Origin: Macrostomum lignano
Taxonomy: Eukaryota
Direction of reading: 5' to 3'
NCBI GenBank assembly: GCA_002269645.1
Contig: NIVC01001091.1
Span: 228,289-292,288, forward strand
DNA length: 64,000 bases
Below, piece by piece: positions 19,714 through 54,680 of the stretch. The notes beneath the pieces were generated by a model that ran no database searches, had not been told where the DNA came from, and was given only the letters and a program-made list of their open reading frames with translations. The translations under genes were made by a program, and so were the position numbers. How positions within the stretch are numbered: the first letter of the stretch is position 1; every line of letters begins with the position of its first letter.

Positions 19714-19905
<192 letters not shown>

Positions 19906-20734: not shown

Positions 20735-20905
20735 CCCCCCAAATACTCAGGCTGGGCTGCCACTCTCCCAGATCCTCAGTTGCTGAGCAACCCAGATCCT
20801 CAGTTGCTGGGCTGTCACCCTCCCAGGTTCTCAGTTGCTGAGCCACCATCCCAGATCCTCGGTTGCTGGGCTGTCACCCTCCCAGATCCTCAGTTGCAGG
20901 GCCAC
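20735..20905. repeat. Short array of the CCCAGATCCTCAG repeat family
   Basis: Shares its core with the array at 1775-2660. Confidence 0.8.
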
Positions 20906-21874
20906 AAGCCTCCCAAATGATATCTTAAATTATAGAACTTTGATACGAAGCCATTTTTGGGTTTCTTTTCAGCTGAGGTAGTCCAGTAAGTTGAAGAATC
21001 TGACTAAATATTGTCTCCTGCACTTACAATGCAGGAGACGGCGTGGAATTCGGCATTGAAATTGGTATAGGCATAAAATATTAAATAATAATTAAAGCAA
21101 TACTTTTGTATCTCAGGACAAATTAAATTGCTGTTGGTGAATAACATACAAGAAACGGAGTGAATATTCATACGGACAAGAAAATTTTGTAATCTCCTTC
21201 ACAAAATTTGGCAAGCCAGTTAAAAACTCGGTGATTTTTGTGGTTTTCAAGGTCGTGACTTTGCTAATTGGTGATGCCATACGACTGCTCGTAGAATGTC
21301 GCTTGCAACTTCTTTTATCTCGATCAAAGATCTGGAGGAATGCGCATCATTGGTGCACACAAGTAGCTCTTTACAAGTGGCAAATAAGGTGGCAAATAGA
21401 GACAGTCAATCGATAGTGTAAGAGCTGCATATATGACGTCTAGTATTGCATAAATCTGTCACTCTAACAGCACTTGCCTCATTGAAGCATAGTACTTGTA
21501 GTTGACTTTAAAGATCTAAGGCAAGCTTGTCGAATAACTATGTTCAAAAAATTTTCGGATTTCAATACAGCACGAATGGTAGCAATCTCTTGCAAAGCCA
21601 ACAACCCATGCCGTTGAAGACCGTGCTGAAATCGTGCTTGTTCTTTTCTTTTCTTTGATGAATCATCTGATATTGAGAACATTTTGCAACTTCAATAGTC
21701 GAGAATCAAGTTATTGCCGTCTGCGTTGCCGTATGAAGCATCATGTGGAAGTTCAATTTAATCATGGGATGAAGTTGCATTATTTTAGGCACAATTTATA
21801 CGTGCATAAATATTATAGTAAAGTGTTAAACAAGTTACTACGACCGTATTTGAAGTAAAAAGTTAAGTTTGAGA

Positions 21875-22688
21875 CTAAGTGCCACAGACCGCCACTGTAA
21901 TTTTCGACTCTTGCACTGCATTGACTTCGTGGCACTTACAGTCCAGACCGCCACTGTAATTTTCGGCTCTTGCACCGCACTGACTTCGTGGCACTTACAG
22001 TTCAGACTGCCACTGTAATTTTCGGCTCTTGCACTGCATTGACTTCGTGGCACTTACAGACCGCCACTGTAATTTTCGGCTCTTGCACCGCACTGACTTC
22101 GTGGCACTTACAGTTCAGACTGCCACTGTAATTTTCGGCTCTTGCACTGCATTGACTTCGTGGCACTTACAGACCGCCACTGTAATTTTCGGCTCTTGCA
22201 CCGCACTGACTTCGTGGCACTTACAGACCAGACTGCCACTGTAATTTTCGGCTCTTGCACTGTATTGACTTCGTGGCACTTACAGACCAGACTGCCACTG
22301 TAATTTTCGGCTCTTGCACTGCATTGACTTCGTGGCACTTACAGACCGCCACTGTAATTTTCGGCTCTTGGACTGCACTGACTTCGTGGCACTTACAGAC
22401 CAGACTGCCACTGTAATTTTCGGCTCTTGCACTGCACTGACTTCGTGGCACTTACAGACCAGACTGCCACTGTAATTTTCGGCTCTTGCACTGCATTGAC
22501 TTCGTGGCACTTACAGACCAGACTGCCACTGTAATTTCGGCTCTTGCACTGCACTGACTTCGTGGCACTTACAGACCAGACTGCCACTGTAATTTCGGCT
22601 CTTGCACTGCACTGACTTCGTGGCACTTACAGTCCAGACCGCCACTGTAATTTTCGGCTCTTGCACTGCACTGACTTCGTGGCACTTG
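21875..22688. repeat. 54/59-bp minisatellite CAGACCAGACTGCCACTGTAATTTTCGGCTCTTGCACTGCATTGACTTCGTGGCACTTA
   Basis: About 14 tandem units in DHX9 intron 7. Confidence 0.93.
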
Positions 22689-24595
22689 CGTCGTTTGTTT
22701 TTGAATGTACGAGATGTCGTAGATGTCGGCGTAGAGTTGCCGTGGCAATGGCAAGCTTCCAGTTGGTAGAGTCCAACTATTTGTTTGAAGTTGTCATGAT
22801 TTTGGCAGTGTCTTGCATGACTGAAATTTTTAAATATTTATTCGGGGCACAGACCGAGTCAAATGGGGTTTATTGGTTGGCCTGACGCGTTGTCAATAAC
22901 TCTGGTCGTCAGGGAGCCACTGCAAAGAAATCTCTTGTCTCTTTGTCGTGAACTGACGACTCCAACGCAAGGGTGGAGACGTGTCTCAGGACAGCTTGTG
23001 GTCGAAGTTGACGCCCACACTGTGATTCGTAAAGGTCCGAAAGAAGATCCGCAGGAGGTCCATTATGTAAGGTCCGCGGCGTCTATATATGCGGATCTTA
23101 TCGTCAATGCGGACCTTAAACGTCCGAAAGGAAGGTCCTCAGAAGGTCCAAATTAAATGTCCGTGGCATCCTTGAAACGGAACTCTTGGTTGATTTCGTA
23201 CTGCATTTTTTCATAATTGAACTGTAGGAGGAGTTTATTTAATTATTGTTATAGCTACCAGGGAAGTTTTATTTTGTTCAAAGAGTAAAAATACCCATTT
23301 TTGTAAAGATACATTCTTTTCCGTTTTCATTTGCGAACGCTTTCCTGACAAAGGTTTTCTTAATTTAGTAAATGTGTTGGATGTGCTTTTTAAAAGAACA
23401 ATTATATTTCGCCAAGCAACAAAAGATGCTTAGAAGTAATTGAAAGCAAGTACAAGGCAATACATTATACAGGCATTGAAATCAATTGAAATTGAAAGCA
23501 AGAAAAAAACAATGCATTATGCGGGCATTCAGAGTAGCTAAGTATTAGTGACTGTCAAAAACCAATTATGAGGTAAAAAATGCACCGATAACATGTAACA
23601 TTATATCATTAGCTATAATAAAGCATGTAAGGAACACTATATACAAAAATATGCAATTAATAATGCATAAAAAACCAGACTGACAGCAAAAACAACGATT
23701 GACAAAAGATACCAGTTCATTCATTTACTTCTAAATAATTCTAAATATCAATCATAATTCAAACAACTATTTTGGGATTGTGTAGAGGGGACATAAATAC
23801 AACACCATCCAAAGAGCTATTTCGCTTTGAATTGAATCCCCAGTTCTTTATGGATGTGATGTATTGTTAAGAAGCAAATGAATGATTGTAGAAATATTAC
23901 TTAGTGTCAGCGAACTATGGGCACCAGCATCATCATTCAGCAACAAATAAAGCATGATTAGCGAAATGCAGTGAGCAAAGATATGGCATCACTGCGTGAA
24001 TGAATCTAAATTTCTTGCCACTGACATTGAACTTGATGAACTAGGCATAGACTCAATCTAACGATGCATTCTATAAATATGAAGTTATATCCTAAAGAAT
24101 GGTATGATCTATTGTGTGTGTCACTAATTTCTTTATGTTAGTTGATTGAAAAGAGCAAAATTAGCACTTAAAATCATCCATAATCCATAATACCCTTGGC
24201 CGTTGGTTGGCCCTTCTAGAGTTCTAGGCTCTGAGCCTAGTTAAAAAATATTTTATACTTTCTTCTTGAAGCCTTATTTAATAAGCCCTACAATAGATGC
24301 TAGACACGTCTGCTCATGGTATTAAAATACGAAGGTTCATCACATTCAAGTTTCATCTTTTAGATTGGTCAAATACAGCTTTTAAGAAAATAAACAACTT
24401 GCAACGTTTAATGTAATGTATTAGCAAATCCTCCGGTGAAAAAGAACTAAATTAGCTTGAGTTTATGTATTTTATTTATCATCACCCTATCATACGAGTA
24501 TGAGTTCCATTGATTTTTGTTGAAGACTCATTCTGTGAGGTCCGAATTTTTTTATAAGGTCCGAAATTCCAATTCGGACCCCCGATGGCCGTTAT

Positions 24596-24900
24596 TTATT
24601 TACAGTGCAGAATTTTCGGATAAAAGGCCTGCGGGAGCTGGGTGCCGTTGATGCAGACGTGCAGTCGACGCGAGTACTCGCGCTGGTCCGGGCTGAAGAA
24701 AGTAGCCGTGCAGTTTGAAGTCCAGATCTGTAGTTTGCGCGACTCCAGGAAAGGTGCGAGTTCGGCTAGGTAGTCGTTGAGCTGCTGTTCAATAGAGCTG
24801 CAGATTAGATCCAGATTGGCAACGGTAAGGTCATCCGCGTAGCGGCCGTAGCCGATCAGGTTAGTCTGACTTTCGTCTGGCTTGCCGGTAAACTCGAGGT
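24596..24900 (-). mobile_element. Fragment of a non-LTR retrotransposon RT (domains 5-7)
   Basis: YADDLT...LNDYLAELAPFLESRKLQI...INGTQLP...PKIL, in a GC-rich island within the AT-rich intron. Confidence 0.75.
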
Positions 24901-25691
24901 GCGAACTCGACTTACCTTTCGGCGAGTCTTGGAAAATTGTTTGCAATTCACTATACCAGGGTCTATCTTCGTCACGGAACGTCGCTTCCTGCTGAATTGG
25001 ACGCCTTGATGCCTTCGATACTCACAAAACTACAAAACAAAATTACAAAACTGCGTCAATACTCACAAGACAACATGCAGCTGCAGCAGCCACAATACCA
25101 ACAGCACTCCTCATGCGGACATTAAAATCCGTTAAATTTTGAAATACGAGTAATATATTTGAAGATGACATTATTTTAACAAAAAGGCCAAAAAGGTCCA
25201 TCTATAATTTTTTCGGACACAAGCAGGTCTCAGCTATCTTCTCGACAGCCGATAATTTGTCTAACAGTTTCGTAATTTCAATGGAATTCAATTTGCAATA
25301 CTTCATTCGCAAGCGTCTGCATTAGCTTTGCCTCAGACAGAGTGGCGGTAGCAACTGCCAGCAGAATGATTTCGACCTTAATTGTTAAAACTTGAAGGCG
25401 CATTGAATCGAAAGTGCAAGGGAAAGTACACAAGTAAATAAGCGCAAGGGCAAGTTTGTAATGGCCAAAATAACAGCGCACTGTAAATAAAGGATCAATT
25501 GATATAACAAACTAATATTGACGATAAACAAATCAAAACAAGCAGCAAACAATCAACGTAAACGCCGTGCGCGTAGACAGTTTTGATTCATGCTCTTAAC
25601 TTTGAACCATACATGATACTGAATATTCTATAAGGCTACTTAAGTACAGCACTCTGGCAGGCATATCACTCCACTCTCTTGCACCTAACAG

Positions 25692-26158
25692 GACGCATGC
25701 TGCTACAGGGCTGCGCGCTTGGCTTAGCCCGACCGTGCGCCGCTGTCTGCGCAGCCGCTAGCGCCGGCGACGCGCTGGTTCTGGCGCCTGGCCAGCGCTG
25801 GCTAACCGGTCAGCAGCGCGGCCTGGCCCGGGGCACCAATTCTGATCACGTGGCCTGCCTAGTCGCCCTGCGAATGTTCGAATCGGCCTCCGCTGGCGGC
25901 CCCGGTCGAGCCGAATGGATGTGCGAGGAGCGCGGACTTAGCGCTCCAACGTTGCGCGCCACTCTGGAAGCGCGCAATCAATTGTTGGGCATTCTGCACT
26001 CGTCCGGTTTTGTTGGCGATCACGAGATTGACGGGCCCGAAGGTCCGGCAGCCGCTGATACAGTTGGCGGGGAAGGATTCGACGACTGGGGCGCTTTGGT
26101 CAGCCTGATCACTCTGGGCCTGAGTCCCAATGTCTGCTATCACAAGGAAAAGCGGAAG
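25692..26158 (+). CDS. DHX9: DHX9 exon 8, HA2 domain
   Basis: CTAACAG acceptor (phase 1) gives GRMLLQGC; SDHVA, LRATLEARNQL and PNVCYHKEKRK; AAG|GTGCG donor. Confidence 0.92.
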
Positions 26159-26309
26159 GTGCGCGCATATAATGAATTTATTTTCCCTTCAAAAACTGTC
26201 CTTCGATCCCAGTGCGTATCTTCAAACTGTATCGAATCTTTACCGGTTTCATGTCACCTATTCCAGATATTTATTGATTTATTTTTTCTCTGAATTCTCC
26301 AGCGCTTGT

Positions 26310-28385
26310 CTTACCCATCCCCTATCTTCCCCATTCACTATCTTCCCAATGTCTTATCTTCCCTATTCACTATCTTCCCCATTCACTATCTTCCCAATGT
26401 CTTATCTTCCCTATTCACTATCTTCCCCATTCACTATCTTCCCCATCCACTATCTTCCCCATCCACTATCTTCCCCATTCACTATCTTCCCAATGTCTTA
26501 TCTTCCCTATTCACTATCTTCCCCATTCACTATCTTCCCAATGTCTTATCTTCCCTATTCACTATCTTCCCCATTCACTATCTTCCCCATCCACTATCTT
26601 CCCCATCCACTATCTTCCCCATTCACTATCTTCCCAATGTCTTATCTTCCCTATTCACTATCTTCCCCATTCACTATCTTCCCCATCCACTATCTTACCC
26701 ATCCCCTATCTTCCCCATTCACTATCTTCCCAATGTCTTATCTTCCCTATTCACTATCTTCCCCATTCACTATCTTCCCAATGTCTTATCTTCCCTATTC
26801 ACTATCTTCCCCATTCACTATCTTCCCCATTCACTATCTTCCCCATTCACTATCTTCCCCATCCACTATCTTCCCCATCCACTATCTTCCCCATCCACTA
26901 TCTTTCCCATCCACTATCTTCCCATCCACTATCTTCCCCATTCACTATCTTCCCAATGTCTTATCTTCCCTATTCACTATCTTCCCCATTCACTATCTTC
27001 CCCATCCACTATCTTCCCCATCCACTATCTTCCCCATTCACTATCTTCCCAATGTCTTATCTTCCCTATTCACTATCTTCCCCATTCACTATCTTCCCCA
27101 TCCACTATCTTCCCCATCCACTATCTTCCCCATTCACTATCTTCCCCATTCAGTATCTTCCCCATTCACTATCTTCCCCATCCACTATCTTCCCCATCCA
27201 CTATCTTCCCCATCCACTATCTTTCCCATCCACTATCTTCCCATCCACTATCTTCCCCATTCACTATCTTCCCCATTCACTATCTTCCCAATGTCTTATC
27301 TTCCCTATTCACTATCTTCCCCATCCACTATCTTCCCCATTCACTATCTTCCCCATTCACTATCTTCCCAATTCACTATCTTCCCCATTCACTATCTTCC
27401 CTATTCACTATCTTCCCCATTCACTATCTTCCCAATGTCTTATCTTCCCTATTCACTATCTTCCCCATTCACTATCTTCCCCATTCACTATCTTCCCCAT
27501 CCACTATCTTCCCCATCCACTATCTTTCCCATCCACTATCTTCCCCATCCACTATCTTCCCCATTCACTATCTTCCCCATTCACTATCTTCCCAATGTCT
27601 TATCTTCCCTATTCACTATCTTCCCTATTCACTATCTTCCCCATTCACTATCTTCCCCATCCACTATCTTCCCCATCCACTATCTTTCCCATCCACTATC
27701 TTCCCCATTCACTATCTTCCCAATGTCTTATCTTCCCTATTCACTATCTTCCCTATTCACTATCTTCCCAATTCACTATCTTTCCCATCCACTATCTTCC
27801 CATCCACTATCTTCCCCATTCACTATCTTCCCCATCCACTATCTTTCCCATCCACTATCTTCCCCATTCACTATCTTCCCAATGTCTTATCTTCCCTATT
27901 CACTATCTTCCCTATTCACTATCTTCCCTATTCACTATCTTCCCAATTCACTATCTTTCCCATCCACTATCTTCCCATCCACTATCTTCCCCATTCACTA
28001 TCTTCCCAATGTCTTATCTTCCCTATTCACTATCTTCCCCATCCACTATCTTCCCCATTCACTATCTTCCCTATCCACTATCTTCCCCATTCACTATCTT
28101 CCCAATGTCTTATCTTCCCTATTCACTATCTTCCCCATCCACTATCTTCCCCATTCACTATCTTCCCTATCCACTATCTTCCCAATGTCTTATCTTCCCT
28201 ATTCACTATCTTCCACATTCACTATCTTTCCCATCCACTATCTTTTCATCCACTATCTTCCCCATTCACTATCTTCCCCATTCACTATCTTCCCCATCCA
28301 CTATTTTCCCCATCCACTATCTTCCGAATCGCTTATCTTCCCCATCCACTATCTTCCCAATCGCTTATCTTCCCCATTCACTGTC
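26310..28385. repeat. 16-bp minisatellite TATCTTCCCCATTCAC, DHX9 intron 8
   Basis: More than 100 units; source of spurious 490-768 aa ORFs. Confidence 0.97.
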
Positions 28386-28506
28386 CTTTCTTCCTCACAT
28401 TATTCCTATTTTCCATATCGGCCCATAAATCGTTAGCTTTTCCACCTCTGTACATCTCATATCGTAATAATTTTCATTTAATGCGGCCTTATCAAACAAT
28501 GCGCAG

Positions 28507-29322
28507 GTAATAACAGCTGAAGGTCGCGCCGCGCTTGTCCACAAATCCTCCGTAGTGGCCAGCAACTTCCCCGATCTGCACTTCCCGTCACCTCTATTTG
28601 TGTTCGGGGAGAAGCTGCGCACCAGGGCGGTGTCCTGCAAGCAGCTGTCCAACGTCACGCCGCTCCAATACCTTGTGTTCGGCGCTCGCAAAGCCGTCTG
28701 GACTGGCGGCCGGGTCCTCCTAGACGATTGGATCGGCCTTCAGGTTGACTTCGATACGGCTGCTAAGCTGCTCAGCCTTCGGCCAGCCTTGGAGGCCCTG
28801 CTAGTGAAAGCCTGTCTGCAGCCCGAATCGGTGATTGCCACTACGGCGCCGGACGAGCGGGACAAACGGCTTAGCGATATGTTTCGCTCGTTGAGCCGCT
28901 TCAATGCGGCCGAATGCGGCGTTGCTAGCGGCGTTGCTAGCGGCGTTGCTAGCGGCGGCAAAGAAAGCGAAGATCCTTCCGCTGCTACTGCTAGTAGTAG
29001 CGATCAGTTAAATCAGCCGCCTTATAAGCGATTTAGACCTGCTGGCGGTCAGCTTCAGCAGCAGCAGCAGCAGCAGCTGCAGTTTTCGCCTCGTGGACCG
29101 CCGCCTCCGCCAGGCGCTGTGATAGGCCGCGGCTGGACGCCTCAGCCGACGAGTCAACAGCAGCGACAGCCGGGCTTCTTCGGCGGAGCCGGCGGCCGGT
29201 TCGGCAGCCCGCTGCCGCAGTACCAACAGCGGCAGCCACGTTTCGGCGGCGGCTTCGGCCGTGGCGGTGGCTTCGGCCGTGGCGGCGGCTTCGGTCGTCC
29301 GCCTTATTATGGTCCCAGATGA
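28507..29322 (+). CDS. DHX9: DHX9 exon 9, OB-fold and RGG-type tail
   Basis: GCGCAG acceptor; AALVHKSSV, PSPLFVFGEKLRTRAVSCK, DDWI and GGGFGRGGGFGRGGGFGR; TGA at 29320-29322. The joined CDS is 3978 nt with consistent phases. Confidence 0.95.
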   Translation, partial: VITAEGRAALVHKSSVVASNFPDLHFPSPLFVFGEKLRTRAVSCKQLSNVTPLQYLVFGARKAVWTGGRVLLDDWIGLQVDFDTAAKLLSLRPALEALLVKACLQPESVIATTAPDERDKRLSDMFRSLSRFNAAECGVASGVASGVASGGKESEDPSAATASSSDQLNQPPYKRFRPAGGQLQQQQQQQLQFSPRGPPPPPGAVIGRGWTPQPTSQQQRQPGFFGGAGGRFGSPLPQYQQRQPRFGGGFGRGGGFGRGGGFGRPPYYGPR

Positions 29323-32015: not shown

Positions 32016-34959
<2,944 letters not shown>

Positions 34960-39842: not shown

Positions 39843-40719
39843 CAAACCATTTTTACTATACACGAGTTATACGGTATGTTGTCACTCTTTTGCAACTTGT
39901 CTCACAAGCAGAAAGCAGCAATCGGCCCCATTAGTTTAGTAGGATTATAAAAGGTACGCGCAATTTTAGAAACATTCGCCTCCCGCCTTCTTTGTGCGCT
40001 TCGAGTGTACGCTGTCCGGCTCCCTCAAGCCCTCCTGTTTCGGCCAACCAATATAAGCCGAAGTATAAAGTTTACCGTGGTCTTCTTTGCTTGCTGCTGC
40101 CGCCGCCGATTGCTGTGTGTACAGCGCTGTGTTGAGCTGGCTATCAGCCCCACCCCACCCCGCACACCCCTGTCCGGTTCCTCACCACATATTTCTCCCC
40201 TTCCTCCACTGCCCCGATCGCCCCAATTTCAGGTCCCCAAGACCCTCCGGTACCATCCTCGGTTCCTGTACTGTCTCTCCCGCCCTCCCTCCTGTCCTTC
40301 CCAACCCCCAACCCCGCCCATGGTGAACGCATTGCACTGGCAGTCTTTCTGCTATATAGATTTTAGCTTATTGGATCGAGAGGACAGAGAGAGGGGGTTG
40401 GTGGACGCGCGGTTTTTGAGGTGTATTTTGGCTTCTTTGTTCTCCGATTTCCTTTTACTACTGCATACTGCTGCTACAAACTCATTCCGAGGCAGCTCCA
40501 GCAGCAGTGCCATCCCCTCCTCTCCCCCTATATTTAATCCTCTCTCCAGCCTATCTTGAAGCTTTTGTGCTGTGTTTTTAAACTGCAATTTTGTTTTGTT
40601 GACATTTGCAGCCAAATCGCCGAAATGCGCAACAGCCAGCGCCGCCGGCCATAGTTTATCGCCTCCTTCTCAGTCTCCCTACTCTCTCTCTGTTGTTGCT
40701 TTCTTCTCTGCTCCTAACC

Positions 40720-42167
40720 ATGGGCAACGCATTGCGCCCATTCAAATCGTTGCGCTCGTCCACGCGTCACCGAGCTTCGCTAGCGGCTTCGGCTGCCGAC
40801 CCTGGTGCAGCATCAGCAGCAACAGCAGCAGCAACAGCCGCTCCTAGTAGCAGCAGCGCCGGTGCAACAACTGGCGGAACAACATCAGCAGCGCTGATCA
40901 GCTCGGCCACCTGCTCCATAGCTGTCAACAATAACAATAGCAATGTCAACAATAATAACAATGCGGCAGACATTGTCTCGGCGTCCACGTCGATGTCGGC
41001 GGCCCCGGCTGTTGCCTGCACCGTCGAGCCTGTCGGGGCCTCCTACCAGGCGTCCCAGTCGTTGCTGGGCAGCGCAGAGGAGCGGCTTATCAATAATAAT
41101 AATTCTGCTTTAAACTGCGTTGCGCCTTCCGCTGTCGCCGCTGCATCTTCTGCGGCAACGGCGGCAGCTCCAGCTGGCGCAGCCGAGAGTAGCCCTCGAC
41201 AGCAGGCGGCGGCAGCAGTGGCGGCTTCGGCGGCTTCCCCTGGCAAAGCCAACCTATTCGTCGCCATGTACAACTACGAAGCTCGAACCGAGGAGGATCT
41301 GTCATTTAACAAAGACGAGATGCTGGAGGTGGTGGACAGCGGCCAGGGGCCCTGGTGGATGGCTCGCGGCCTGACCACCGGTCGTCAAGGCTACGTGCCA
41401 TCGAATTTCTTAGCCCAGGCCGAGACCATCGACTCCGAGCCCTGGTTCTTTGGCCAGTTAACGCGCATGGACGCGCAGATTCTACTGCTGCGCACCGAGA
41501 ATCGAGTTGGCTCATTTCTAGTGCGCAACTGCGAGAACCGCTCGTCCAGGCGGCATCACGCGTACTCCCTGTCCGTCCGGGACCACTCGGTGGTGAAGCA
41601 CTACCGGATTCGCCGGCACGAGAGCGGCCTGCTGTTCATCAGTCGGCACGTGAAATTCCGCACCGTGCCGGACCTGATCGCGCACTACAGCGCCGAGTCC
41701 AACGGCCTGTGCACCCGCCTAGTCGCTCCCTGCGTTCGGTCCAATGTCCCCGAGCCGATCGGCCTGTCCTACGACACCGTGGACATGTGGGAGATTCCCA
41801 AGGCGTCGCTGCAGCTGCGCAATCTGGTTGGCCAGGGCCAGTTTGGCGAAGTGTGGGAAGGCGTCTGGAACAGCACAACTCGGGTGGCCGTCAAGACCCT
41901 GAAGCCGGGCACTATGGATGCTAAAGATTTCCTACGCGAGGCGCAGACTATGAAACGATTGCGTCATCCCAACCTCATCCAACTGTACGCCGTGTGCACC
42001 CAGGATGAGCCGATCTACATTGTCACCGAGCTGATGAAGCACGGCAGTCTATTGGATTATTTGCAGGGCCCGGCCGGCCGGAGCCTGGCTGTCAAGGACC
42101 TGCTGTTCATGGGATCGCAGGTGGCCGCCGGGATGGCCTATCTGGAGGGCCGGAACTATATTCACAG
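40720..42167 (+). CDS. Src42A: Src-family tyrosine kinase (Src42A/FRK-like) exon 1: unique domain, SH3, SH2, kinase N-lobe
   Basis: MGNAL start; SH3 [15 protein letters not shown]...GPWW...GYVPSNF; SH2 WFFG...FLVR; [27 protein letters not shown]; AG|GTGAG donor. Confidence 0.92.
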
Positions 42168-42179
42168 GTGAGAGTTTGT

Positions 42180-43830
42180 ATCCCTTATTTATCCCGTGTG
42201 TTCCCTACTTATCCCATCCATCCCCTATTTATCCCATCTATCCCCAATTTATCCCATTCATCCCCTATTTATCCCATCTATCCCCAATTTATCCCATCCA
42301 TCCCTATTTATCCCATGTGTTCCCTACTTATCCCATGTGTTCAATATTTATCCCATCCATCCCCTATTTATCCCATCTATCCCCAATTTATCCCATCCAT
42401 CCCCTATTTATCCCATCTATCCCCAATTTATCCCATTCATCCCCTATTTATCCCATCTATCCCCAATTTATCCCATCCATCCCCTATTTATCCCATTTGT
42501 TACCTATTTATCCCATGTGTTCCCTACTTATCCCATGTGTTCAATATTTATCCCATCCATCCCCTATTTATCCCATTTGTTACCTATTTATCCCATGTGT
42601 TCCCTACTTATCCCATGTGTTCCCTTATCCCATGTGTTCAATATTTATCCCATCCATCCCCTATTTATCCCATTTGTTCCCTATTTATCCCATGTGTTCC
42701 CTATTTATCCCATCCATCCCCTATTTATCCCATTTGTTCCCTATTTATCCCATTTGTTCCCTATTTATCCCATTTGTTCCCTATTTATCCCATGTGTTGC
42801 CTATTTATCCCATGTGTTGCCCATTTATCCTATGTGTTCCCTATTTATCCCATTTATTCCCTATGTATCCCATGTGTTCCCTATTTATCCCATGTGTTGC
42901 CTATTTATCCTATGTGTTCCCTATTTATCCCATTTGTTCCCTATTTATCCCATGTGTTCCCTATTTATCCCATGTGTTCCCTTTTTATCCCATGTGTTCC
43001 CTATTTATCCCATGTGTGGCCTATTTATCCTATGTGTTCCCTATTTATCCCATGTGTTCCCTATTTATCCCTATCCATCCCCAATTTATCCCATTTGTTC
43101 CCTATTTATCCCATGTGTTCCCTATTATTCATCCCATAGATCCTTTATTATCCCATGCATCTCCTATTTATCTCATTCATCCCCACTTTAATCCCTGGAT
43201 CCCCTATATTATCCCATGCATCCCCTATTTATCCCATTCATTCACTATTTATCCCATTCCTCCCCATTTTTATTTCATGCTTCTCCTATTTATCCTATAT
43301 ATCCCTTTTATCCTATATATCCCCTATTTATCTAGTGTATCCCGTATTTTTGCCATGCTTTTCCATGTATTCCCAATTTATCCCATGTATTCCCAATTTA
43401 TCCCATGTATTCCCAATTTATCCCATGTATTCCCAATTTATCCCATGTATTCCCAATTTATCCCATGTATTCCCAATTTATCCCATGTATTCCCAATTTA
43501 TCCCATGTATTCCCAATTTATCCCATGTATTCCCAATTTATCCCATGTATTCCCAATTTATCCCATGTATTCCCAATTTATCCCATGTATTCCCAATTTA
43601 TCCCATGTATTCCCAATTTATCCCATGTATTCCCTATTTATCCCATGTATTCCCTATTTATCCCATGTATTCCCTATTTATCCCATGTATTCCCTATTTA
43701 TCCCATGTATTCCCTATTTATCCCATCCATCCCCTACCTTACTCGTTAATCTCGTATTTATCCCTCATCCCCTATTGCAAGCATGTCAATTTATCCACAT
43801 TTATCCTATGTATCTGTATTAATCCCATAC
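42180..43830. repeat. 20-bp minisatellite TATTTATCCCATGTGTTCCC filling the Src intron
   Basis: About 80 units with a gradual variant gradient. Confidence 0.96.
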
Positions 43831-43952
43831 GTCCCTATCTTTCCCATTCACCTATAAAATGCCATGCACCCATAAATATCCCAAGCAATCCATAAACCTG
43901 GGAGCGTCAAAGCAGCTACAAAATCCCAATAACCCCCTTCCCCAATCCGCAG

Positions 43953-44442
43953 AGACCTGGCTGCCCGCAACATTCTGGTCGGCGACAATCGGGTGGCGAA
44001 GATCTGCGACTTCGGCCTGGCCCGACTGCTGAAAGTCGGCCAGGAATACGAGGCCAGGCACGGCTCCCGGTTCCCGATCAAGTGGACCGCGCCGGAGGCC
44101 GCCAATTTCAGCCGGTTCTCCATCAAATCCGACGTTTGGTCTTACGGCATCCTGCTGATGGAGCTGCTCACCTACGGCCGGGTGCCGTACCCGGGCATGA
44201 GCAACATGGATGTGCTCCATCAGGTTGAGAACGGCTACAGGATGCCCCGGCCGTCCGGCTGTCCGGACCCTGTCTACCGCCTCATGCGCCTCTGCTGGGA
44301 CTCGGACGAGAACAGGCGGCCCAGCTTTGAAGAGATTCACGCCCGGATCGAGGATATGCTCAACGCCGACGATGACGAATGCGTGGGCGGCGGGGGCGGA
44401 GCCTGCGGCGGAGGCGGCGGTAGAAGAAGTCTGTTTAAGTAA
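43953..44442 (+). CDS. Src42A: Src-family kinase exon 2, kinase C-lobe and tail
   Basis: TCCGCAG acceptor restores HRDLAARN; [24 protein letters not shown] and SDVWSYG; TAA at 44440-44442; protein about 645 aa. Confidence 0.94.
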
Positions 44443-49936: not shown

Positions 49937-50272
49937 TCACGCGATACACGCGTGCGTCTCCATCTTGACCTTGACCTTGGAGAAGTCCAGCCGCTTCGTG
50001 AGGTCCTCGGCTCGAAGCTGCGTGTAGGCGCGCCGGCCGCCGGACCGCTGGGCGGCTTTGAGGAAGACGGCGGCGGCCGGGCGGGCTGTGGGCAGGTGCA
50101 GGCCGTGATGCTGCTGGTTGTTGAGCCGCAGGAACCGCTCAGTCCAGGCTCTGAGCAGGATGGACTCCAGGAGCAGGTGCTGGTTGGCCTCGCATAGCAG
50201 CGACATCAGGTGGAAGTCCGAGGTGAGGAAGCCGGGCAACAGGTGGAAGCTCACGTCCCGGATGCGGTGAAC
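49937..50272 (-). CDS. Pannexin-like channel, exon 3 (C-terminal cytoplasmic region)
   Basis: CCCTACAG acceptor, phase 0; VHRIRD...TSDFHLMSLLCEAN resembles Panx1 YNDLSLYNLFLEEN; TGA at 49937-49939, with a weak alternative donor at 49975. Confidence 0.72.
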   Translation of the reverse strand, partial: VHRIRDVSFHLLPGFLTSDFHLMSLLCEANQHLLLESILLRAWTERFLRLNNQQHHGLHLPTARPAAAVFLKAAQRSGGRRAYTQLRAEDLTKRLDFSKVKVKMETHACIA

Positions 50273-50319
50273 CTGTAGGGATGTTCGGAATGTCCTTGAA
50301 GTGTCTGGAGATCGGAGAG

Positions 50320-50600
50320 TGTGGTATTTCAAGGGACTGTGGTATGTCTTGGGGTGTGGTATTTCTGATGGGTGTGGTATTTCTGAGGGGTGTGGTATTT
50401 CTGATGGGTGTGGTATTTCTGAGGGGTGTGGTATTTCTGAGGGGTGTGGTATTTCTGAGGGGTGTGGTATTTCTGGGGAGTGTTGGATTTCTGGAGATGT
50501 GGTATTTTCTAAGGGGTGTGGGATTTCTGGGGAGGGTGGAATTTCTGTGGGTGTGGGATTTCTGGGGGTGTGGGTTTTGTGGGATTTGGGAGACGTTCGA
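50320..50600. repeat. 18-bp minisatellite GGTGTGGTATTTCTGAGG
   Basis: Tandem units next to the exon 3 acceptor. Confidence 0.88.
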
Positions 50601-51199
50601 TTATTTAAAATGTGGCACATGCGATTTTTGTGGAATGTAGGATAATTTGTGAATTGTGGGTCTAATATGAATGTTGAATTCCGTAGAATGTAATGTGACA
50701 ACATTTAATGCTTCTTTACCAACACATTTATCCTCAAATTTAGAAACCACGAAGAAGTAGAAGAGAATTAAATTAAATCACCTTTGATAATTTTTCCTTT
50801 TCAAAAGTTTTAATCGCGCGCGACCCTCTCACGAAACGAGGTCCCACTCCTCATCACGGATTAGAAAGACTAAATAGGATTGCTTCAACTCCCCATCTCT
50901 TAATCCCCGGTCTCGGTGGTGTGGCGTGACACTCAAGCGAGGATTTTTGGCCACTTCCGTCGGGGGTGGCGGGGCAGGTACGGCTCCCTGGCCTGTCGAA
51001 TGCAGGCGAATGGCAAAGAAGCAGCGCGGGGCGTTGCAGGGAGATCGAGGCCGGATGAAGGCGGGAGCAGGGAGGCTGAGCAAATATGCCGCCAGCATCG
51101 GCTTGGCTTATGAGTCATGCTTTCGGACTGAGCTGAAGAGAACCCGCATGAGCCAAGCAATGAGTGAAGGATGGAAATAATGAGTGATATTGTGAGTTC

Positions 51200-52110
51200 C
51201 TGAGTGAATTTATGAGTGAGTTCATGAGTGAGTTCATGAGTGAGTTCATGAGTGAGTTCATGAGTGAGTTCATGAGTGAGTTCATGAGTGAGTTCATGAG
51301 TGAGTTCATGAGTGAGTTCATGAGTGAGTTCATGAGTGAGTTCATGAGTGAGTTCATGAGTGAGTTCATGAGTGAGTTCATGAGTGAGTTCATGAGTGAG
51401 TTCATGAGTGAGTTCATGAGTGAGTTCATGAGTGAGTTCATGAGTGAGTTCATGAGTGAGTTCATGAGTGAGTTCATGAGTGAGTTCATGAGTGAGTTCA
51501 TGAGTGAGTTCATGAGTGAGTTCATGAGTGAGTTCATGAGTGAGTTCATGAGTGAGTTCATGAGTGAGTTCATGAGTGAGTTCATGAGTGAGTTCATGAG
51601 TGAGTTCATGAGTGAGTTCATGAGTGAGTTCATGAGTGAGTTCATGAGTGAGTTCATGAGTGAGTTCATGAGTGAGTTTATGAGTGAGATCTTGAGTGAG
51701 TTCATGAGTGAGATCTTGAGTGAGTTCATAAGTGAGTTCATGAGTGAGTTCATGAGTGAGTTCATGAGTGAGTGAGTTCATGACTGAGTTCATGAGTGAG
51801 TTCATGAGTGAGTTCATGAGTGAGTGAGTTCATGAGTGAGTTCATGAGTGAGTGAGTTCATGAGTGAGTTCATGAGTGAGTTTATGAGTGAGATCTTGAG
51901 TGAGTTCATGAGTGAGATCTTGAGTGAGTTCATAAGTGAGTTCATGAGTGAGTTCATGAGTGAGTTCATGAGTGAGTGAGTTCATGACTGAGTTCATGAG
52001 TGAGTTCATGAGTGAGTTCATGAGTGAGTGAGTTCATGAGTGAGATCTTGAGTGAGTTCATGAGTGAGTTCATGAGTGAGTGAGTTCATGAGTGAGATCT
52101 TAAGTGAGTG
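51200..52110. repeat. 12-bp satellite (ATGAGTGAGTTC)n, forward array
   Basis: About 75 units; inverse of the array at 53510-54680. Confidence 0.97.
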
Positions 52111-52126
52111 GCTCAGCCGGTCTCAC

Positions 52127-52631
52127 CTCATTCCTATAGTACCCCAGCGCCATCAGCTTGATGAAGCTGGCAAAGAAGCTGGCCTCCATGTAGGCGTCCT
52201 CCCTGAAGGCCAGCCTCGACTGGGCGAAGCGGAGCCGGGCGAAGGCGACTTGGGCGGCGCAGACGGCGGCAGCAGCGGCCAGGAGGCCCAGCAGTGCGGC
52301 GTTCGCCCAGCGCGACAGCGGCTGAGCGCAGGTGGCCATGGTGGCTCCGTGGCGATCGGTTTGGCACGTCCGGCTGGCCGGGAACGGCGCCAGGGAGCCG
52401 GCGGCGCCGCAGGCGAGGGCGCCACAGGCGAACAGCAGGATCTGGCCAGCAAGGCAGGCACCCTGCTTGGCTGCCCAGGCGCGCCACAGGCGGCCGGAGG
52501 TCTGCCAGGCGGCCAGGCGGTGGCCGAGCGTCCAGTCGATGCGACCGGCCTCGCAGCTGGCCAGGCGGGCGGCGCCGATGGCCGAGAAGCCGCCGAGAAG
52601 GGGCGGCTGGCGGGGCGGCTCAGCGGCTTCT
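52127..52631 (-). CDS. Pannexin-like channel, exon 2 (intracellular loop, TM3, EL2, TM4)
   Basis: CTCCACCAG acceptor (phase 2) and GAG|GTGAGA donor. Stop-free frame EAAEPP...LWRAWAAKQGACLAGQILLFACGAL...SRTCQTDRHGATMATCAQPLSRWANAALLGLL...YYRNE has two EL2 Cys. Confidence 0.75.
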
Positions 52632-52649
52632 CTGGTGGAGAGAAATTTC

Positions 52650-52860
52650 GGGGGATGAGATTATCTCTATGAGAGAGATTCTGGGGGATGAGATTATCTC
52701 TGTGAGAGAGATTCTACAGGATGAGATTATCTCTGTGAGAGAGATTCTACAGGATGAGATTATCTCTGTTAGAGATCTCTGGGATGAGATTATCTCTGTG
52801 AGAGAGATTCTACGGGATGAGATTAGCTCCGTGCGAGAGATTTCGGGGGATGAGATTATC
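52650..52860. repeat. About 33-bp repeat GAGATTATCTCTGTGAGAGAGATTCTACAGGAT, pannexin intron 1
   Basis: About 6 units; related to the array at 57770-58160. Confidence 0.85.
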
Positions 52861-52895
52861 TAAGAGTCAAGAGATTAACCGTTCCCCCGCTCTAC

Positions 52896-53277
52896 CTCCC
52901 GATGAGGTCTGTCAGCTGCCGCAGCATCCCACCAGCAGCCTCCGCCGCAGCAGGGGGCCAACAGCGTGACTCCACCACAGGTGCGGCAGCCACATCAGCC
53001 CGGCGTAGGTCAGCAACCCTATCGCGAGGTCGCGGGTTCGAGTCCCAACCGGTTGCAGCAGCGGGCACAGCTGACTGAGAAACTCCATCGTCTGTTGACT
53101 GGCATTCTGACGATGGTCGAGCAGGCACTGGCCAGGCGAGGTCGCGAGTTCGATTCCGAACAGCCCGAACGACAGGCCCATCGGCCAGATGACGGAGAGG
53201 AGCTGGAGAAGGCGGTCCGGCAACAGTAGGATGCTGAACTTTGAATAATCATCAGGGGATTTGCTTCGTGAATGCAT
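52896..53277 (-). CDS. Pannexin-like channel, exon 1 (TM1, EL1, TM2), with an apparent 1-bp deletion at 52928-52930
   Basis: MHSRSKSPDDYSKFSILLLPDRLLQLLSVIWPMGLSFGLFGIELATSPGQC...FLSQLCP...AGLMWLPHLWWSHAVGPLL aligns by eye with Panx1 [30 protein letters not shown]..C...C...LLYLPPLFWRFAAAP; AG|GTAG donor at 52895. Confidence 0.72.
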
Positions 53278-53509
53278 GGCCTGGCGATGCAAATGCTTTT
53301 GGCTCTGCCTCGAGTTAAATATCCCACTTAGGCCGCTCCGCCATCCAATCGGAAAGGAAGGCAGCTCTTATTTAGAGCTGCTTTAAATCCTTAACGTGCT
53401 ACTGATTAAGTAGAAATACTGAAATTCTAATAGAATTTTCATTTACGAAATCAGTCAGTCAGACAGTCAGTCAGTCAGTCAGTCAGTCAGACAGTCGGTC
53501 AGTAACCCA

Positions 53510-54680
53510 CTCACTCACTCACATGAATTCACTCATGAACTCACTCATGAACTCACTCATGAACTCACTCACTCATGAACTTACTCATGAACTCACTCAT
53601 GAACTCACTCATGAACTCACTCATGAACTCACTCACTCATGAACTCACTCACTCATGAACTCACTCACTCATGAACTCACTCATGAACTCACTCACTCAT
53701 GAACTTACTCATGAACTCACTCATGAACTCACTCATGAACTCACTCATGAACTCACTCATGAACTCACTCATGAACTCACTCATGAAGTCACTCATGAAC
53801 TCACTCATGAACTCACTCATGAACTCACTCATGAACTCACTCATGAACTCACTCATGAACTCACTCACTCATGAACTTACTCATGAACTTACTCATGAAC
53901 TCACTCATGAACTCACTCATGAACTTACTCATGAACTCACTCACTCATGAACTCACTCATGAACTCACTCATGAACTCACTCATGAACTCACTCATGAAC
54001 TCACTCATGAACTCACTCATGAACTCACTCATGAACTCACTCACTCATGACCTCTCTCGAGAACTTACTCATGAACTCACTCATGAACTCACTCATGAAC
54101 TCACTCATGAACTCACTCATGAACTCACTCATGAACTCACTCACTCATGAACTTACTCATGAACTCACTCATGAACTTACTCATGAACTCACTCATGAAC
54201 TCACTCATGAACTCACTCATGAACTCACTCATGAACTCACTCATGAACTCACTCACTCATGAACTTACTCATGAACTCACTCATGAACTCACTCATGAAC
54301 TCACTCACTCATGAACTTACTCATGAACTTACTCATGAACTCACTCATGAACTCACTCATGAACTTACTCATGAACTCACTCACTCATGAACTCACTCAT
54401 GAACTCACTCATGAACTCACTCATGAACTCACTCATGAACTCACTCATGAACTCACTCATGAACTCACTCATGAACTCACTCACTCATGACCTCTCTCGA
54501 GAACTTACTCATGAACTCACTCTTGAACTCACTCATGAACTCACTCATGAACTCACTCATGAACTCACTCATGAACTCACTCACTCATGAACTTACTCAT
54601 GAACTCACTCATGAACTTACTCATGAACTCACTCATGAACTCACTCATGAACTCACTCATGAACTCACTCATGAACTCAC
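53510..54680. repeat. 12-bp satellite (GAACTCACTCAT)n, inverted array; preceded by (TCAG)n at 53452-53500
   Basis: About 95 units; the unit is the reverse complement of that in 51200-52110. Confidence 0.97.

What the first reader, a model, noticed from the sequence alone, without database searches (positions are those of the whole stretch)
49937..53277. Pannexin-type (not innexin-type) large-pore channel in an invertebrate-like genome, with an extracellular glycosylation sequon
Seen: splicing three exons that the ORF track does not join gives about 407 aa with four TM segments, two Cys in each extracellular loop and an N-A-S sequon in EL1 (HRQNASQQ). The YYQWVP signature of classical innexins is absent. 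Segments LLLPDRLL..SVIWPM, LMWLPHLWW..AVGP and SDFHLMSLLCEAN look closer to chordate Panx1 than to innexins (manual comparison). Established: loop N-glycosylation keeps vertebrate pannexins non-junctional. Inference: a non-junctional, possibly ATP-releasing channel from a poorly described invertebrate pannexin lineage.
Basis: partly seen in the sequence, partly recalled or inferred. Interest (0 to 1): 0.7.

Follow-up and report, generated by a model that had tools for sequence, protein, structure and literature searches.

The report
Pannexin-like channel gene in a flatworm
The window, from the free-living flatworm Macrostomum lignano, carries an unannotated three-exon gene for a very divergent four-helix membrane channel whose small flatworm family resembles vertebrate pannexins more than ordinary invertebrate innexins, although this copy may have a one-base frame break.

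Summary
The gene is real and lies on the minus strand at 49937-53277. A profile built only from its relatives hits exactly three collinear segments there (E 3e-6, 1e-21, 2e-24). The window is Macrostomum lignano: a neighbouring kinase exon is 100% identical to an NCBI M. lignano protein.

The four helices, two Cys in each outer loop, the N58-A-S sequon and the absence of YYQWVP are all confirmed. In-frame joins through weaker sites give 390 or 386 aa.

The protein alone hits nothing in Pfam or the PDB. An exhaustive search of 1.84 billion proteins found only 8 relatives, and every named one is a flatworm protein.

The family profile hits PANX3 (4e-16), PANX1 and PANX2 far better than C. elegans INX-6 (9e-6). 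Profile-profile, reciprocal HMM, fold and distance-tree tests all place the family with chordate pannexins, apart from scallop, cnidarian and ctenophore innexins. N58 aligns with the known glycosylation sites of PANX2 and PANX3.

Channel function, glycosylation, expression and true orthology to pannexins remain untested.

The parts
52933..53277 (-). Exon 1 (residues 1-115). It holds the start ATG at 53277, the N-terminal LLLPDRLL motif (53206-53229), TM1 (53143-53223), outer loop 1 and TM2 with MWLPHLWW (52972-52995).
   Evidence: ORF and translation. Family HMM hit at 52936-53292, iE 3.4e-6. Helices from the AF2 model. Coordinates.
53098..53106 (-). N58-A-S60 sequon in outer loop 1, between Cys51 (53125-53127) and Cys71 (53065-53067), 13 residues before the second Cys.
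   Evidence: It lies in the same alignment column as Panx2 N-F-T. The family consensus 'nvs' aligns with PANX3 N71-F-S. PANX2 N86 and PANX3 N71 are glycosylated according to PMC3928549.
52896..52932 (-). Ambiguous 3' end of exon 1. It is intronic in the in-frame models. In the 407 aa model it is coding (..VG?MLRQLTDLIG-R), but only after a 1-nt frame change within about 52927-52932. The strong donor GGGAG|GTAGAG ends at 52896.
   Evidence: The frame-0 stop TGA lies at 52912-52914.
52619..52895 (-). Intron 1, mostly a 33-bp minisatellite (52652-52861). Its exact ends depend on the model: 52619-52932, 52607-52932 or 52632-52895.
   Evidence: Tandem repeats. Enumeration of splice sites.
52127..52618 (-). 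Exon 2 (residues 116-279 of the 390 aa model; it would start at 52631 in the 407 aa model). It holds the cytoplasmic loop with DWTL..WQTS, TM3 (52403-52492), outer loop 2 with Cys200 (52364-52366) and Cys212 (52328-52330), TM4 (52229-52315) and FFASFIKLMA.
   Evidence: Family HMM hit at 52064-52588, iE 9.7e-22. Donor AATGAG|GTGAGA. Coordinates.
50273..52126 (-). Intron 2 (1854 nt, phase 0, GT..AG). It contains a 12-mer minisatellite (51192-52081) and an 18-mer minisatellite (50319-50573).
   Evidence: The alignment with relatives is continuous across the junction (YYRNE|VHRIRD).
49937..50272 (-). Exon 3 (residues 280-390 plus the stop codon). It is the conserved cytoplasmic C-terminal domain, with SDFHLMSLLCEAN (50183-50221), WTERFLRL and LRAEDLTKRLDFSKVKVKME (49958-50017). 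The stop falls at the position conserved across the family.
   Evidence: Family HMM hit at 49955-50275, iE 1.6e-24. Alignment A1. Coordinates.

Best explanation
The locus is an unannotated Macrostomum lignano gene for a highly divergent subunit of the innexin/pannexin superfamily of large-pore channels. It has three exons on the minus strand, and its introns are filled with minisatellites. It belongs to a small family known so far only from flatworms (trematodes, cestodes, a monogenean, M. lignano) and from a few unnamed environmental contigs.

Shown here: by sequence profile, predicted fold and distance trees the family is nearer to chordate pannexins than to canonical innexins. The fold is four transmembrane helices, a loop-1 helix plus strand packed against a loop-2 beta-hairpin, one Cys pair in each outer loop, and a helical cytoplasmic C-terminal domain.

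Inferred from pannexin structures: the subunits assemble into a ring, possibly a heptamer. The N-terminus and loop 1 would line a wide pore. N58 in loop 1 would be N-glycosylated, which would favour single-membrane (non-junctional) channels that pass anions, ATP or other small metabolites.

The strongly conserved extreme C-terminus (LRxEDLSxRLxFSKxRxKxE) probably regulates gating or trafficking, but this is speculation.

Whether this particular copy is intact is open. As assembled, either it uses weak splice sites (390 or 386 aa) or it carries a 1-nt frame error or mutation near 52930 (407 aa model).
For: Gene reality: a relatives-only HMM hits only the three exons. GC3 periodicity is coding-like. 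Intron 2 has clean phase-0 splice sites. The start and stop fall at positions conserved in the family.

Organism: 100% identity to an M. lignano protein and 96-98% DNA identity to NCBI contig NIVC01001110.1.

Family: 8 hits among 1.84e9 proteins, the best at 7e-36. All named hits are flatworm proteins. The window protein scores 186 bits (E 1e-58) against the relatives-only HMM.

Superfamily: P0002 passes the Pfam Innexin gathering score, 26.2 against 25. The family profile hits PANX3 at 4e-16, Panx1 at 8e-11, PANX2 at 2.5e-10 and INX-6 at 8.7e-6.

Pannexin affinity:
- The family HMM gives 27-49 bits for lancelet and vertebrate pannexins, 4-21 for scallop innexins, and about 0-7 for ctenophore and cnidarian innexins.
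- Reciprocal HMM scoring agrees.
- hhalign gives 97.5-98.2% against 30-46%, with all four loop Cys aligned.
- The NJ split has 100% bootstrap support at three trimming levels.
- Foldseek's top hits are all pannexins, then LRRC8, for both the M. lignano model (pLDDT 65.9, TM helices 87-93) and a cestode member.

Sequon: N58 is positionally equivalent to PANX2 N86 and PANX3 N71.
Against: - The window protein alone has no Pfam or PDB hit. It scores only 4-9 bits against pannexin HMMs. Its N-terminal half is eroded relative to its own family: 18-19 bits against 168 bits for the C-terminal part. It lacks W in W[LI]DR, lacks the SLQHxxYPF stretch before TM2, and has KQ in place of KH.
- The strongest splice sites are out of frame.
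- Relatives are intronless.
- No identical or close protein from M. lignano is on record, so there is no expression evidence, and a decaying copy in this polyploid genome is possible.
- The innexin comparison set lacks flatworm, nematode and arthropod sequences, apart from INX-6 in the PDB search. Trees were NJ on BLOSUM distances, and all branches are long.
- The EL1 sequon is not conserved across the family.
- Nothing about conductance, oligomer state or glycosylation was or could be measured.
Confidence: 0.7

Rival explanations
1. The family is a fast-evolving flatworm innexin paralogue. It groups with chordate pannexins because both have lost the canonical innexin motifs and sit on long branches (long-branch attraction, or shared loss), not because they share a pannexin-type ancestor.
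For: All sequences are very divergent, with 13-18% identity to pannexins in structural alignments. The position of the family relative to tunicate pannexins is unstable: 33-72% support for family + vertebrate/lancelet, and 27-66% for chordate monophyly. INX-6 (28 bits) scores about as well as lancelet pannexin (30 bits) with the A1 profile. UniProt's automatic name for the Paragonimus members is 'Innexin'. Only NJ distance trees were possible.
Against: The signal agrees across independent measures: HMM scoring in both directions, profile-profile comparison, fold, and trees. The pannexin match spans TM1-TM4 over 253-284 columns, while the innexin match stops after TM2 at about 105 columns. Family-to-pannexin scores (15-56 bits) equal or exceed pannexin-to-innexin scores (17-39 bits), whereas family-to-innexin scores are -5 to 21. 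The sequon position is shared with PANX2 and PANX3.
Confidence: 0.25
2. The M. lignano locus is a pseudogene or decaying duplicate. An originally intronless gene would have been interrupted by minisatellite-bearing insertions and a frameshift, and so would no longer make a channel.
For: Homologues in Hymenolepis diminuta and in four unnamed contigs are uninterrupted ORFs. The best donor/acceptor pair is out of frame, giving 1223 nt. Loop 1 is shortened and several family motifs in the N-terminal half are lost. The gene is absent from the NCBI M. lignano protein set and from all assembled read sets in the collection.
Against: All three exons are open with strong GC3 periodicity. Intron 2 is excised precisely by canonical GT..AG in phase 0 without loss of aligned residues. 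An in-frame canonical join exists for intron 1. Start, stop, all four loop Cys and the invariant C-terminal residues are retained. A single-base indel next to a G run is also a typical long-read assembly error.
Confidence: 0.3
3. It is an LRRC8-type, CALHM-type or other unrelated four-helix membrane protein, or a chance ORF produced by GC-rich sequence.
For: GC-rich exon 2 is open in several frames, and Ala/Leu/Gly-rich 'helices' can arise from composition alone. LRRC8 chains appear among the fold matches from rank 13 onward.
Against: The relatives-only HMM hits exactly the proposed frames at E down to 1.6e-24. The family profile finds no LRRC8, CALHM or connexin chain in the PDB even at E<=10. 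There is no Pfam Pannexin_like, LRR or other domain. Pannexins outrank LRRC8 in both fold searches.
Confidence: 0.03

Closest known systems
Chordate pannexins (PANX1, PANX2, PANX3; the lancelet and lamprey single pannexin)
   Same: They are the best sequence-profile, profile-profile and fold matches. Shared features are four TM helices, two Cys in each outer loop with all four aligned, a D-[KR] motif before TM1 (LLPDRLL against LELPLDRIV in PANX3), a [LM]-[WY]-[LI]-P-x-[LF]-x-W motif at the end of TM2, and EF-x-C...C-x-L in loop 2. The EL1 sequon sits at the PANX2 N86 / PANX3 N71 position.
   Different: Identity is only about 13-18%, and the family forms a separate clade of its own. It occurs in a protostome. 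Loop 2 is shorter, with 12 residues between the Cys against 19. The window protein lacks the H-K-x-F-P-Y stretch before TM2, which its relatives keep as QHECYPF. The conserved C-terminal tail (LRxEDLSxRLxFSKxRxKxE) has no counterpart in pannexins. No caspase-site tail is evident. Function is untested.
Canonical innexins (Pfam PF00876 core: C. elegans INX-6, scallop, Clytia and ctenophore innexins)
   Same: They belong to the same superfamily and share the topology, the two Cys per loop, and the D-x(10)-N motif after TM4 (SDFHLMSLLCEAN against DGVFVLRVVGKN). One family member passes the Pfam Innexin threshold.
   Different: There is no YYQW[VI]PF motif, no FPRVT-x-CDF...QCVLPIN-x-FNEK loop 2 and TM4 signature, and only weak profile scores: -5 to 21 bits, hhalign 30-46% over TM1-TM2 only. 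INX-6 is not among the top 50 fold matches. The family was not included in the 2388-sequence innexin census of Welzel & Schuster 2022. Seven other P. westermani innexins are listed there, but A0A5J4P2L0 does not occur in the supplementary files as held, some of which were cut when stored.
Uncharacterised flatworm proteins of the same family (Paragonimus KAF6771794 / UniProt A0A8S9YRX2 and A0A5J4P2L0, auto-named 'Innexin'; Cichlidogyrus KAL3308710; Echinostoma VDP91622; Rodentolepis VDO11448; Hymenolepis CDS28824)
   Same: They are true homologues, alignable over the full length at 25-38% identity. They share the motifs, the four Cys and the C-terminal domain.
   Different: They are longer (589-632 aa), with long disordered N-termini and cytoplasmic-loop inserts. 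They are intronless where genomic DNA was seen. Most carry N-x-S/T at the loop 2/TM4 edge rather than in loop 1. None has been studied experimentally, as far as the searched literature shows.
LRRC8 (VRAC) pore domain
   Same: It is a second-tier fold match with the same four-helix large-pore architecture.
   Different: There is no sequence-profile match even at E<=10, no leucine-rich-repeat domain, and no Pfam Pannexin_like hit.

Membership tests
Innexin/pannexin superfamily (Pfam PF00876 clan) | Significant match to a family profile | tested here: met
   Met at the family level. P0002 scores 26.2 bits against the gathering score of 25 on PF00876. The family profile hits PANX3 at 4e-16 and INX-6 at 8.7e-6. 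The window protein itself has no Pfam hit at E<=10, but it scores 186 bits against the relatives-only family HMM.
Innexin/pannexin superfamily (Pfam PF00876 clan) | Four transmembrane helices, cytoplasmic N- and C-termini, and two conserved Cys in each extracellular loop | tested here: met
   AF2 helices at 19-45, 77-114, 158-187 and 217-245. C51/C71 and C200/C212. All four Cys align with the pannexin Cys. Orientation in the membrane is inferred, not tested.
Canonical innexins | YYQW[VI]PF motif at the start of TM2 | tested here: not met
   The motif is absent from the window protein, which has a deletion there. Relatives carry QHECYPF, HHQYYPF or NHTNVPF instead.
Canonical innexins | Innexin-type loop 2 and TM4 (C-D-F...Q-C-V-L-x-I-N-x-x-N-E-K), and a higher score with innexin than with pannexin profiles | tested here: not met
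   Loop 2 reads F-x-C-x-L, then 8-12 residues, then C-x-L. Innexin HMMs give -5 to 21 bits against 15-56 bits with pannexin HMMs. hhalign gives 30-46% against 97.5-98.2%.
Chordate pannexins | Best reciprocal similarity to pannexins, and grouping with them to the exclusion of innexins | tested here: met
   The NJ split has 100% bootstrap support. Caveat: innexin sampling is thin and only a distance method was used.
Chordate pannexins | Orthology to PANX1/2/3, meaning nesting inside the chordate clade | tested here: inconclusive
   The family is monophyletic (100%). It falls either beside chordate pannexins or between tunicate pannexins and the others. Support for each arrangement is 27-72% depending on trimming.
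Chordate pannexins | N-glycosylation in an extracellular loop | tested here: inconclusive
   The N58-A-S sequon is present at the PANX2 N86 / PANX3 N71 column. Occupancy cannot be tested in silico. The sequon is shared only by P0002/P0010 within the family.
Chordate pannexins | Heptameric single-membrane large-pore channel permeable to ATP or anions | not testable with these tools
   Only monomer models were made. No functional data exist.
LRRC8 / VRAC | Pannexin_like N-terminal pore domain (PF12534) followed by C-terminal leucine-rich repeats | tested here: not met
   There is no Pfam hit and no LRRC8 chain in the profile search at E<=10. The protein ends 145 residues after TM4 with no repeats.

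The most novel reading that the evidence does not exclude
A pannexin-type branch of the innexin superfamily already existed in the bilaterian ancestor. It survives both as the chordate pannexins and as this overlooked flatworm family, so pannexins would not be a chordate-specific derivative of innexins. In that case flatworms would run two large-pore systems side by side: canonical innexins for gap junctions, and glycosylatable pannexin-like proteins as single-membrane release channels.
Probability: 0.35. Interest if true: 0.75.

Novelty: new variant of a known kind. Interest (0 to 1): 0.6.

Why it matters
Pannexins are usually treated as the chordate remnant of the innexin family, made non-junctional by loop glycosylation. 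Where they branch from innexins is unresolved. A protostome family that is closer to pannexins than to innexins, and that carries a sequon at the PANX2/PANX3 site in at least one member, would give an outgroup for tracing how pannexin-type channels arose. It would also offer a genetically tractable flatworm (M. lignano) for asking what such channels do outside chordates. The family is also present in parasitic trematodes, cestodes and monogeneans, where a surface large-pore channel could be of physiological or pharmacological interest. For genome annotation, the case shows that this family falls below standard Pfam thresholds and was missed both in the M. lignano annotation and, in the lists examined here, in a large innexin census.

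Tried and rejected
- Pfam, PDB and word-indexed homology searches with the joined protein alone all returned nothing. Only the exhaustive HMMER scan found relatives.
- A word-indexed search with the family alignment returned only the two cestode clusters, so it did not widen the family.
- The look-up of the window's LINE ORF to identify the organism failed. The kinase exon search succeeded instead.
- The NCBI M. lignano contig that matches the window ends at about window position 47.1 kb. It therefore could not serve as a second copy for checking the frame break.
- HMM scoring could not discriminate between the 390/386 aa and 407 aa exon-1/2 models: 186.0 against 186.6 bits. Other in-frame donors for the strong acceptor give a stop (52976) or delete the conserved end of TM2 (52979, 52994).
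- Flatworm innexin sequences could not be obtained. The Welzel & Schuster FASTA supplements are truncated before the Platyhelminthes. Scallop, Clytia and ctenophore innexins were used instead.
- A first bootstrap run with Biopython's distance calculator timed out. It was re-implemented with numpy.
- The second AF2 model (cestode member) was poor overall, with pLDDT 46.6 because of long disordered regions. Its fold matches are supportive only.
- Searching papers for the run accessions of the closest relatives identified only ERR14224705, a Tara Pacific coral long-read metagenome. The source organisms remain unknown.
- Literature searches found no description of a flatworm pannexin-like family.
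- Rejected readings were LRRC8, CALHM, connexin and chance ORF.


Full report
**What is in the sequence**

On the minus strand, 53277 to 49937 holds three open segments separated by minisatellite-rich DNA. Exon 1 starts at ATG 53277. Exon 2 ends at a textbook donor, AATGAG|GTGAGA, with 52127 as the last exon base. Exon 3 begins after CCCTACAG| at 50272 and ends at TGA 49937-49939.

In the chosen frames, GC content by codon position (1st/2nd/3rd) is 0.64/0.44/0.75 for exon 1, 0.68/0.62/0.89 for exon 2 and 0.66/0.41/0.90 for exon 3. Verified neighbouring exons show the same shape. This matters because the GC-rich exons are open in several frames, so an open frame alone would prove little.

The decisive check used an HMM built only from relatives found elsewhere, run against the six-frame translation of all 64 kb. 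It hits exactly these three segments, in order and on one strand, and nothing else. The hits are 52936-53292 (iE 3.4e-6), 52064-52588 (9.7e-22) and 49955-50275 (1.6e-24). The start and stop also fall at the positions conserved across the family.

**The exon 1 / exon 2 join**

The best donor (GGGAG|GTAGAG, exon end 52896) and the best acceptor (TTTCTCTCCACCAG|A, exon start 52631) are compatible in phase with each other, but not with the frame that starts at 53277. That frame reaches a TGA at 52912-52914. Exons defined by the strong sites total 382+505+336 = 1223 nt, or 407.7 codons.

Fully in-frame canonical alternatives use the donor CTG|GTGGGA (52933) with the acceptor GAG|CC (52618) or CAG|CC (52606). 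They give 390 or 386 aa. The family HMM cannot choose between the models, scoring 186.6 against 186.0 bits. The 407 aa version has a loop length closer to that of the nearest relative, and a weak L-R-x-L..L match to the family's L-x-R-x-E-L-x-x-x-R-E motif.

The frame problem is therefore either an assembly indel, a real mutation, or not a problem at all if the weak sites are used. Only reads or cDNA can settle this.

**Organism and surroundings**

The SH2-kinase exon at 40.6-42.2 kb is 100% identical to the NCBI protein BOX15_Mlig001734g1 of Macrostomum lignano. The end of that protein's contig, NIVC01001110.1, aligns to window 31-47 kb at 96-98% identity. M. lignano is a free-living flatworm (Platyhelminthes, Macrostomorpha).

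Neighbouring features are a cyclin-T-like gene, a DEAH helicase split by a gypsy-type retrotransposon, a LINE element, and an Src42A/Frk-type kinase. No M. lignano protein on record corresponds to the candidate gene, so it is unannotated.

**Features of the protein (390 aa model)**

- The AF2 model, made with the family alignment, has mean pLDDT 65.9 and pTM 0.64. The four membrane helices (19-45, 77-114, 158-187, 217-245) reach pLDDT 87-93.
- Loop 1 has a short strand and a helix. Loop 2 is a beta-hairpin. A helical cytoplasmic domain follows TM4.
- Cys51 and Cys71 lie in loop 1, and Cys200 and Cys212 in loop 2.
- There is a single sequon, N58-A-S.
- No YYQWVP motif is present.

**Relatives**

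The protein alone has no Pfam match even at E<=10, no PDB match and no word-indexed match. The exhaustive HMMER scan of 1.84 billion representatives found only eight proteins, with E-values from 7e-36 to 6e-5.

Every named one is from a flatworm: Paragonimus species, Cichlidogyrus, Echinostoma, Rodentolepis and Hymenolepis. The rest come from unnamed read-set or metagenome contigs. One of those sources is a Tara Pacific coral long-read metagenome.

The alignment shows a coherent family with these shared elements:
- F-x-T-x-W-[LI]-D-R-x-L before TM1
- two loop-1 Cys
- S-L-Q-H-x-x-Y-P-F and W-x-P-H-L-x-W-Q in TM2
- D-W-S-L..W-Q-x-[ST]..R-x-Y-x-x-K-H before TM3
- F-x-C-x-L...C-x-L in loop 2
- F-F-G-x-F-I-x-L-L-A
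- S-D-F-H-F-x-S-L-L-C-x-E-N
- W-x-E-R-[FY]
- a strongly conserved extreme C-terminus, L-R-x-E-D-L-S-x-R-L-x-F-S-K-x-R-x-K-x-E

The M. lignano protein keeps the C-terminal half well (168 bits), but its N-terminal half is eroded (18-19 bits). It lacks the Trp of W-[LI]-D-R, has a loop 1 that is shorter by more than ten residues (about 14 against its nearest relative P0001) and lacks the Q-H-x-x-Y-P-F stretch, and has K-Q in place of K-H.

**Superfamily membership**

One member, P0002, passes the Pfam Innexin gathering score (26.2 against 25 bits) over TM1-loop 1-TM2. A profile of the family hits the following PDB chains:

| Target | E-value | Bits |
|---|---|---|
| PANX3 | 4.3e-16 | 62 (two stretches) |
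| frog Panx1 | 8e-11 | 44.7 |
| PANX2 | 2.5e-10 | 43 (one stretch covering TM1 to TM4) |
| human PANX1 | ~4e-9 | ~39 |
| C. elegans INX-6 | 8.7e-6 | 28 |

No LRRC8, CALHM or connexin chain appears even at E<=10.

**Pannexin-type or innexin-type?**

I took real sequences from the supplement of Welzel & Schuster 2022 (PMC8769644). These were lancelet, lamprey, chimaera and skate Panx1 and Panx2, three tunicate homologues, five scallop innexins, four ctenophore innexins and three Clytia innexins. Five tests followed.

1. With the two family HMMs (one with and one without the window protein), vertebrate and lancelet pannexins score 27-49 bits. Tunicates score -6 to 27, scallop innexins 4-21, and ctenophore and Clytia innexins about -2 to 7.
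2. In the reverse direction, each full-length family member scores 15-56 bits with pannexin HMMs and -5 to 21 bits with innexin HMMs. Pannexin-to-innexin cross scores are 17-39 bits.
3. hhalign gives 97.5-98.2% probability (E 8e-12 to 4.5e-14, 253-284 columns, TM1 to TM4, all four Cys aligned) for family against pannexins. For family against innexins it gives 30-46% (E 2-5e-4, about 105 columns, TM1-TM2 only).
4. NJ trees on BLOSUM62 distances, with 200-300 bootstraps and three trimming levels, recover the family as monophyletic in 100% of replicates. They also recover the split {family + chordate pannexins} | {scallop + Clytia + ctenophore innexins} in 100%. The placement of the family relative to tunicate pannexins is unresolved.
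5. Foldseek against the PDB returns only pannexins as the top 12 hits for the M. lignano model (E 8e-6 to 2e-4, TM 0.5-0.64) and as the top 23 hits for a cestode member. LRRC8 follows, and INX-6 is not in the top 50.

The limits are clear. No flatworm, nematode or arthropod innexins were available apart from INX-6 in the PDB search. Only distance trees could be built. All lineages are long-branched, so attraction between two derived groups cannot be excluded.

**The sequon**

In both the HMM alignment to PANX3 and the MAFFT alignment with Panx2, N58 of the M. lignano protein falls in the same column as N71 of PANX3 (S-N-F-S) and as the N-F-T of Panx2. In each case it lies 13 residues before the second loop-1 Cys. 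N86 of Panx2 and N71 of Panx3 are the established glycosylation sites (PMC3928549).

Within the flatworm family this loop-1 sequon is not conserved. Only P0002/P0010 have one nearby (N-V-S). Most members instead have N-x-S/T at the edge between loop 2 and TM4, which may be too close to the membrane to be used. The two lineages that lack it are the two that have a loop-1 sequon.

Welzel & Schuster also show that loop sequons are widespread in non-chordate innexins, and that some glycosylatable innexins still form junctions. The sequon is therefore suggestive of non-junctional function, not diagnostic.

**Mechanism**

The following are shown: homology to pannexins, the fold, the Cys pattern and the sequon position. 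The following are inferred from pannexin structures: a ring of subunits forming a wide pore lined by the N-terminus, TM1 and loop 1; glycan at N58 that hinders head-to-head docking; and passage of anions, ATP or small metabolites. The residue aligned with the PANX1 pore-constriction Trp74 is Gln61 in my reading of the alignment. The role of the conserved C-terminal tail is unknown.

**Is this copy alive?**

Points in favour are open exons, GC3 periodicity, a precise phase-0 intron 2, retained invariant residues, and an available in-frame join. Points against are the frame conflict at the strong sites, the eroded N-terminal half, the intronless relatives, the lack of any transcript or annotation evidence, and a polyploid genome in which redundant copies can decay. 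I put a functional gene at roughly 55-65%.

**Novelty**

The superfamily is well known. This flatworm family appears undescribed in the literature I could search. UniProt's automatic name for two Paragonimus members is 'Innexin'. The 2022 census lists seven other P. westermani innexins, but this member does not occur in the supplementary files as held, some of which were cut when stored. I classify the finding as a new variant of a known kind. The evolutionary reading, a pannexin-type lineage predating the split between protostomes and deuterostomes, is the interesting part and remains unproven.

Noticed in passing
window 51192-52081 and 53522-54680: The same 12-bp minisatellite (GTGAGTTCATGA) occurs as two large arrays in opposite orientation. 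One lies inside intron 2 and the other just upstream of the start codon, so together they bracket exons 1-2. The arms reach 421 nt at 80-89% complementarity. This could promote hairpins, inversion or assembly trouble at this locus.
   Followed up: partly
window 32018-34866 (LINE ORF 32113-34920, minus strand): A 2.85-kb non-LTR element with an intact 935 aa RT + RNase H ORF is absent from the otherwise 96-98% identical NCBI M. lignano contig NIVC01001110.1 (L004). This is an insertion difference between haplotypes, homeologues or assemblies, and suggests recent activity.
   Followed up: partly
L005/L006 6001-7869; L001 1300-2571; L002 863-2137; L003 393-1271: Homologues of the candidate are single uninterrupted ORFs in genomic DNA of Hymenolepis diminuta and in the unnamed contigs. 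The M. lignano gene has two introns made largely of minisatellites. This points either to intron gain or to insertions into a formerly intronless gene.
   Followed up: partly
alignment A1 / all.aln, loop 2-TM4 edge (window residue N220, about 52304-52306): Most family members have N-x-S/T at the start of TM4 (NAS, NMS, NMT, NYS). The two lineages lacking it (M. lignano NAA, P0002 NIA) are the ones with a loop-1 sequon (NAS, NVS). Every full-length member therefore has at least one candidate extracellular sequon.
   Followed up: partly
window 49958-50017 (residues 365-384): The extreme C-terminus, L-R-x-E-D-L-S/T-x-R-L-x-F-S-K-x-R/K-x-K-x-E, is among the best conserved stretches of the whole family, yet it is modelled with low confidence (pLDDT 34-40). 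It has no counterpart in pannexins or innexins. It may be a regulatory or trafficking motif.
   Followed up: no
window 10120-29322 (+), with 14004-18186 (-) inside it: A DEAH-box helicase gene (Helicase_C + HA2 at 20044-20727; by eye a DHX9-type with a Gly-rich tail at 28555-29322) is spread over about 19 kb. A gypsy-type LTR retrotransposon (RT/RNase H ORF 14585-17398, gag-like ORF 17395-18186) sits in one intron on the opposite strand.
   Followed up: partly
window 40606-44442 (+): An Src42A/Frk-type tyrosine kinase has its SH3, SH2 and N-lobe in one long exon. A 1.5-kb 20-mer minisatellite (42177-43726) fills the intron before the C-lobe exon (43993-44442). The NCBI protein for it is annotated as partial because its contig ends nearby.
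   Followed up: partly
L002 (Logan ERR14224705) and L001 (Logan DRR639838): The two closest relatives of the window protein (35-38% identity, and more than 90% identical to each other) come from a Tara Pacific coral long-read metagenome and from an unrelated Japanese run. The source organism is unknown. It may be a reef-associated flatworm, or a sign that the family extends beyond flatworms.
   Followed up: partly
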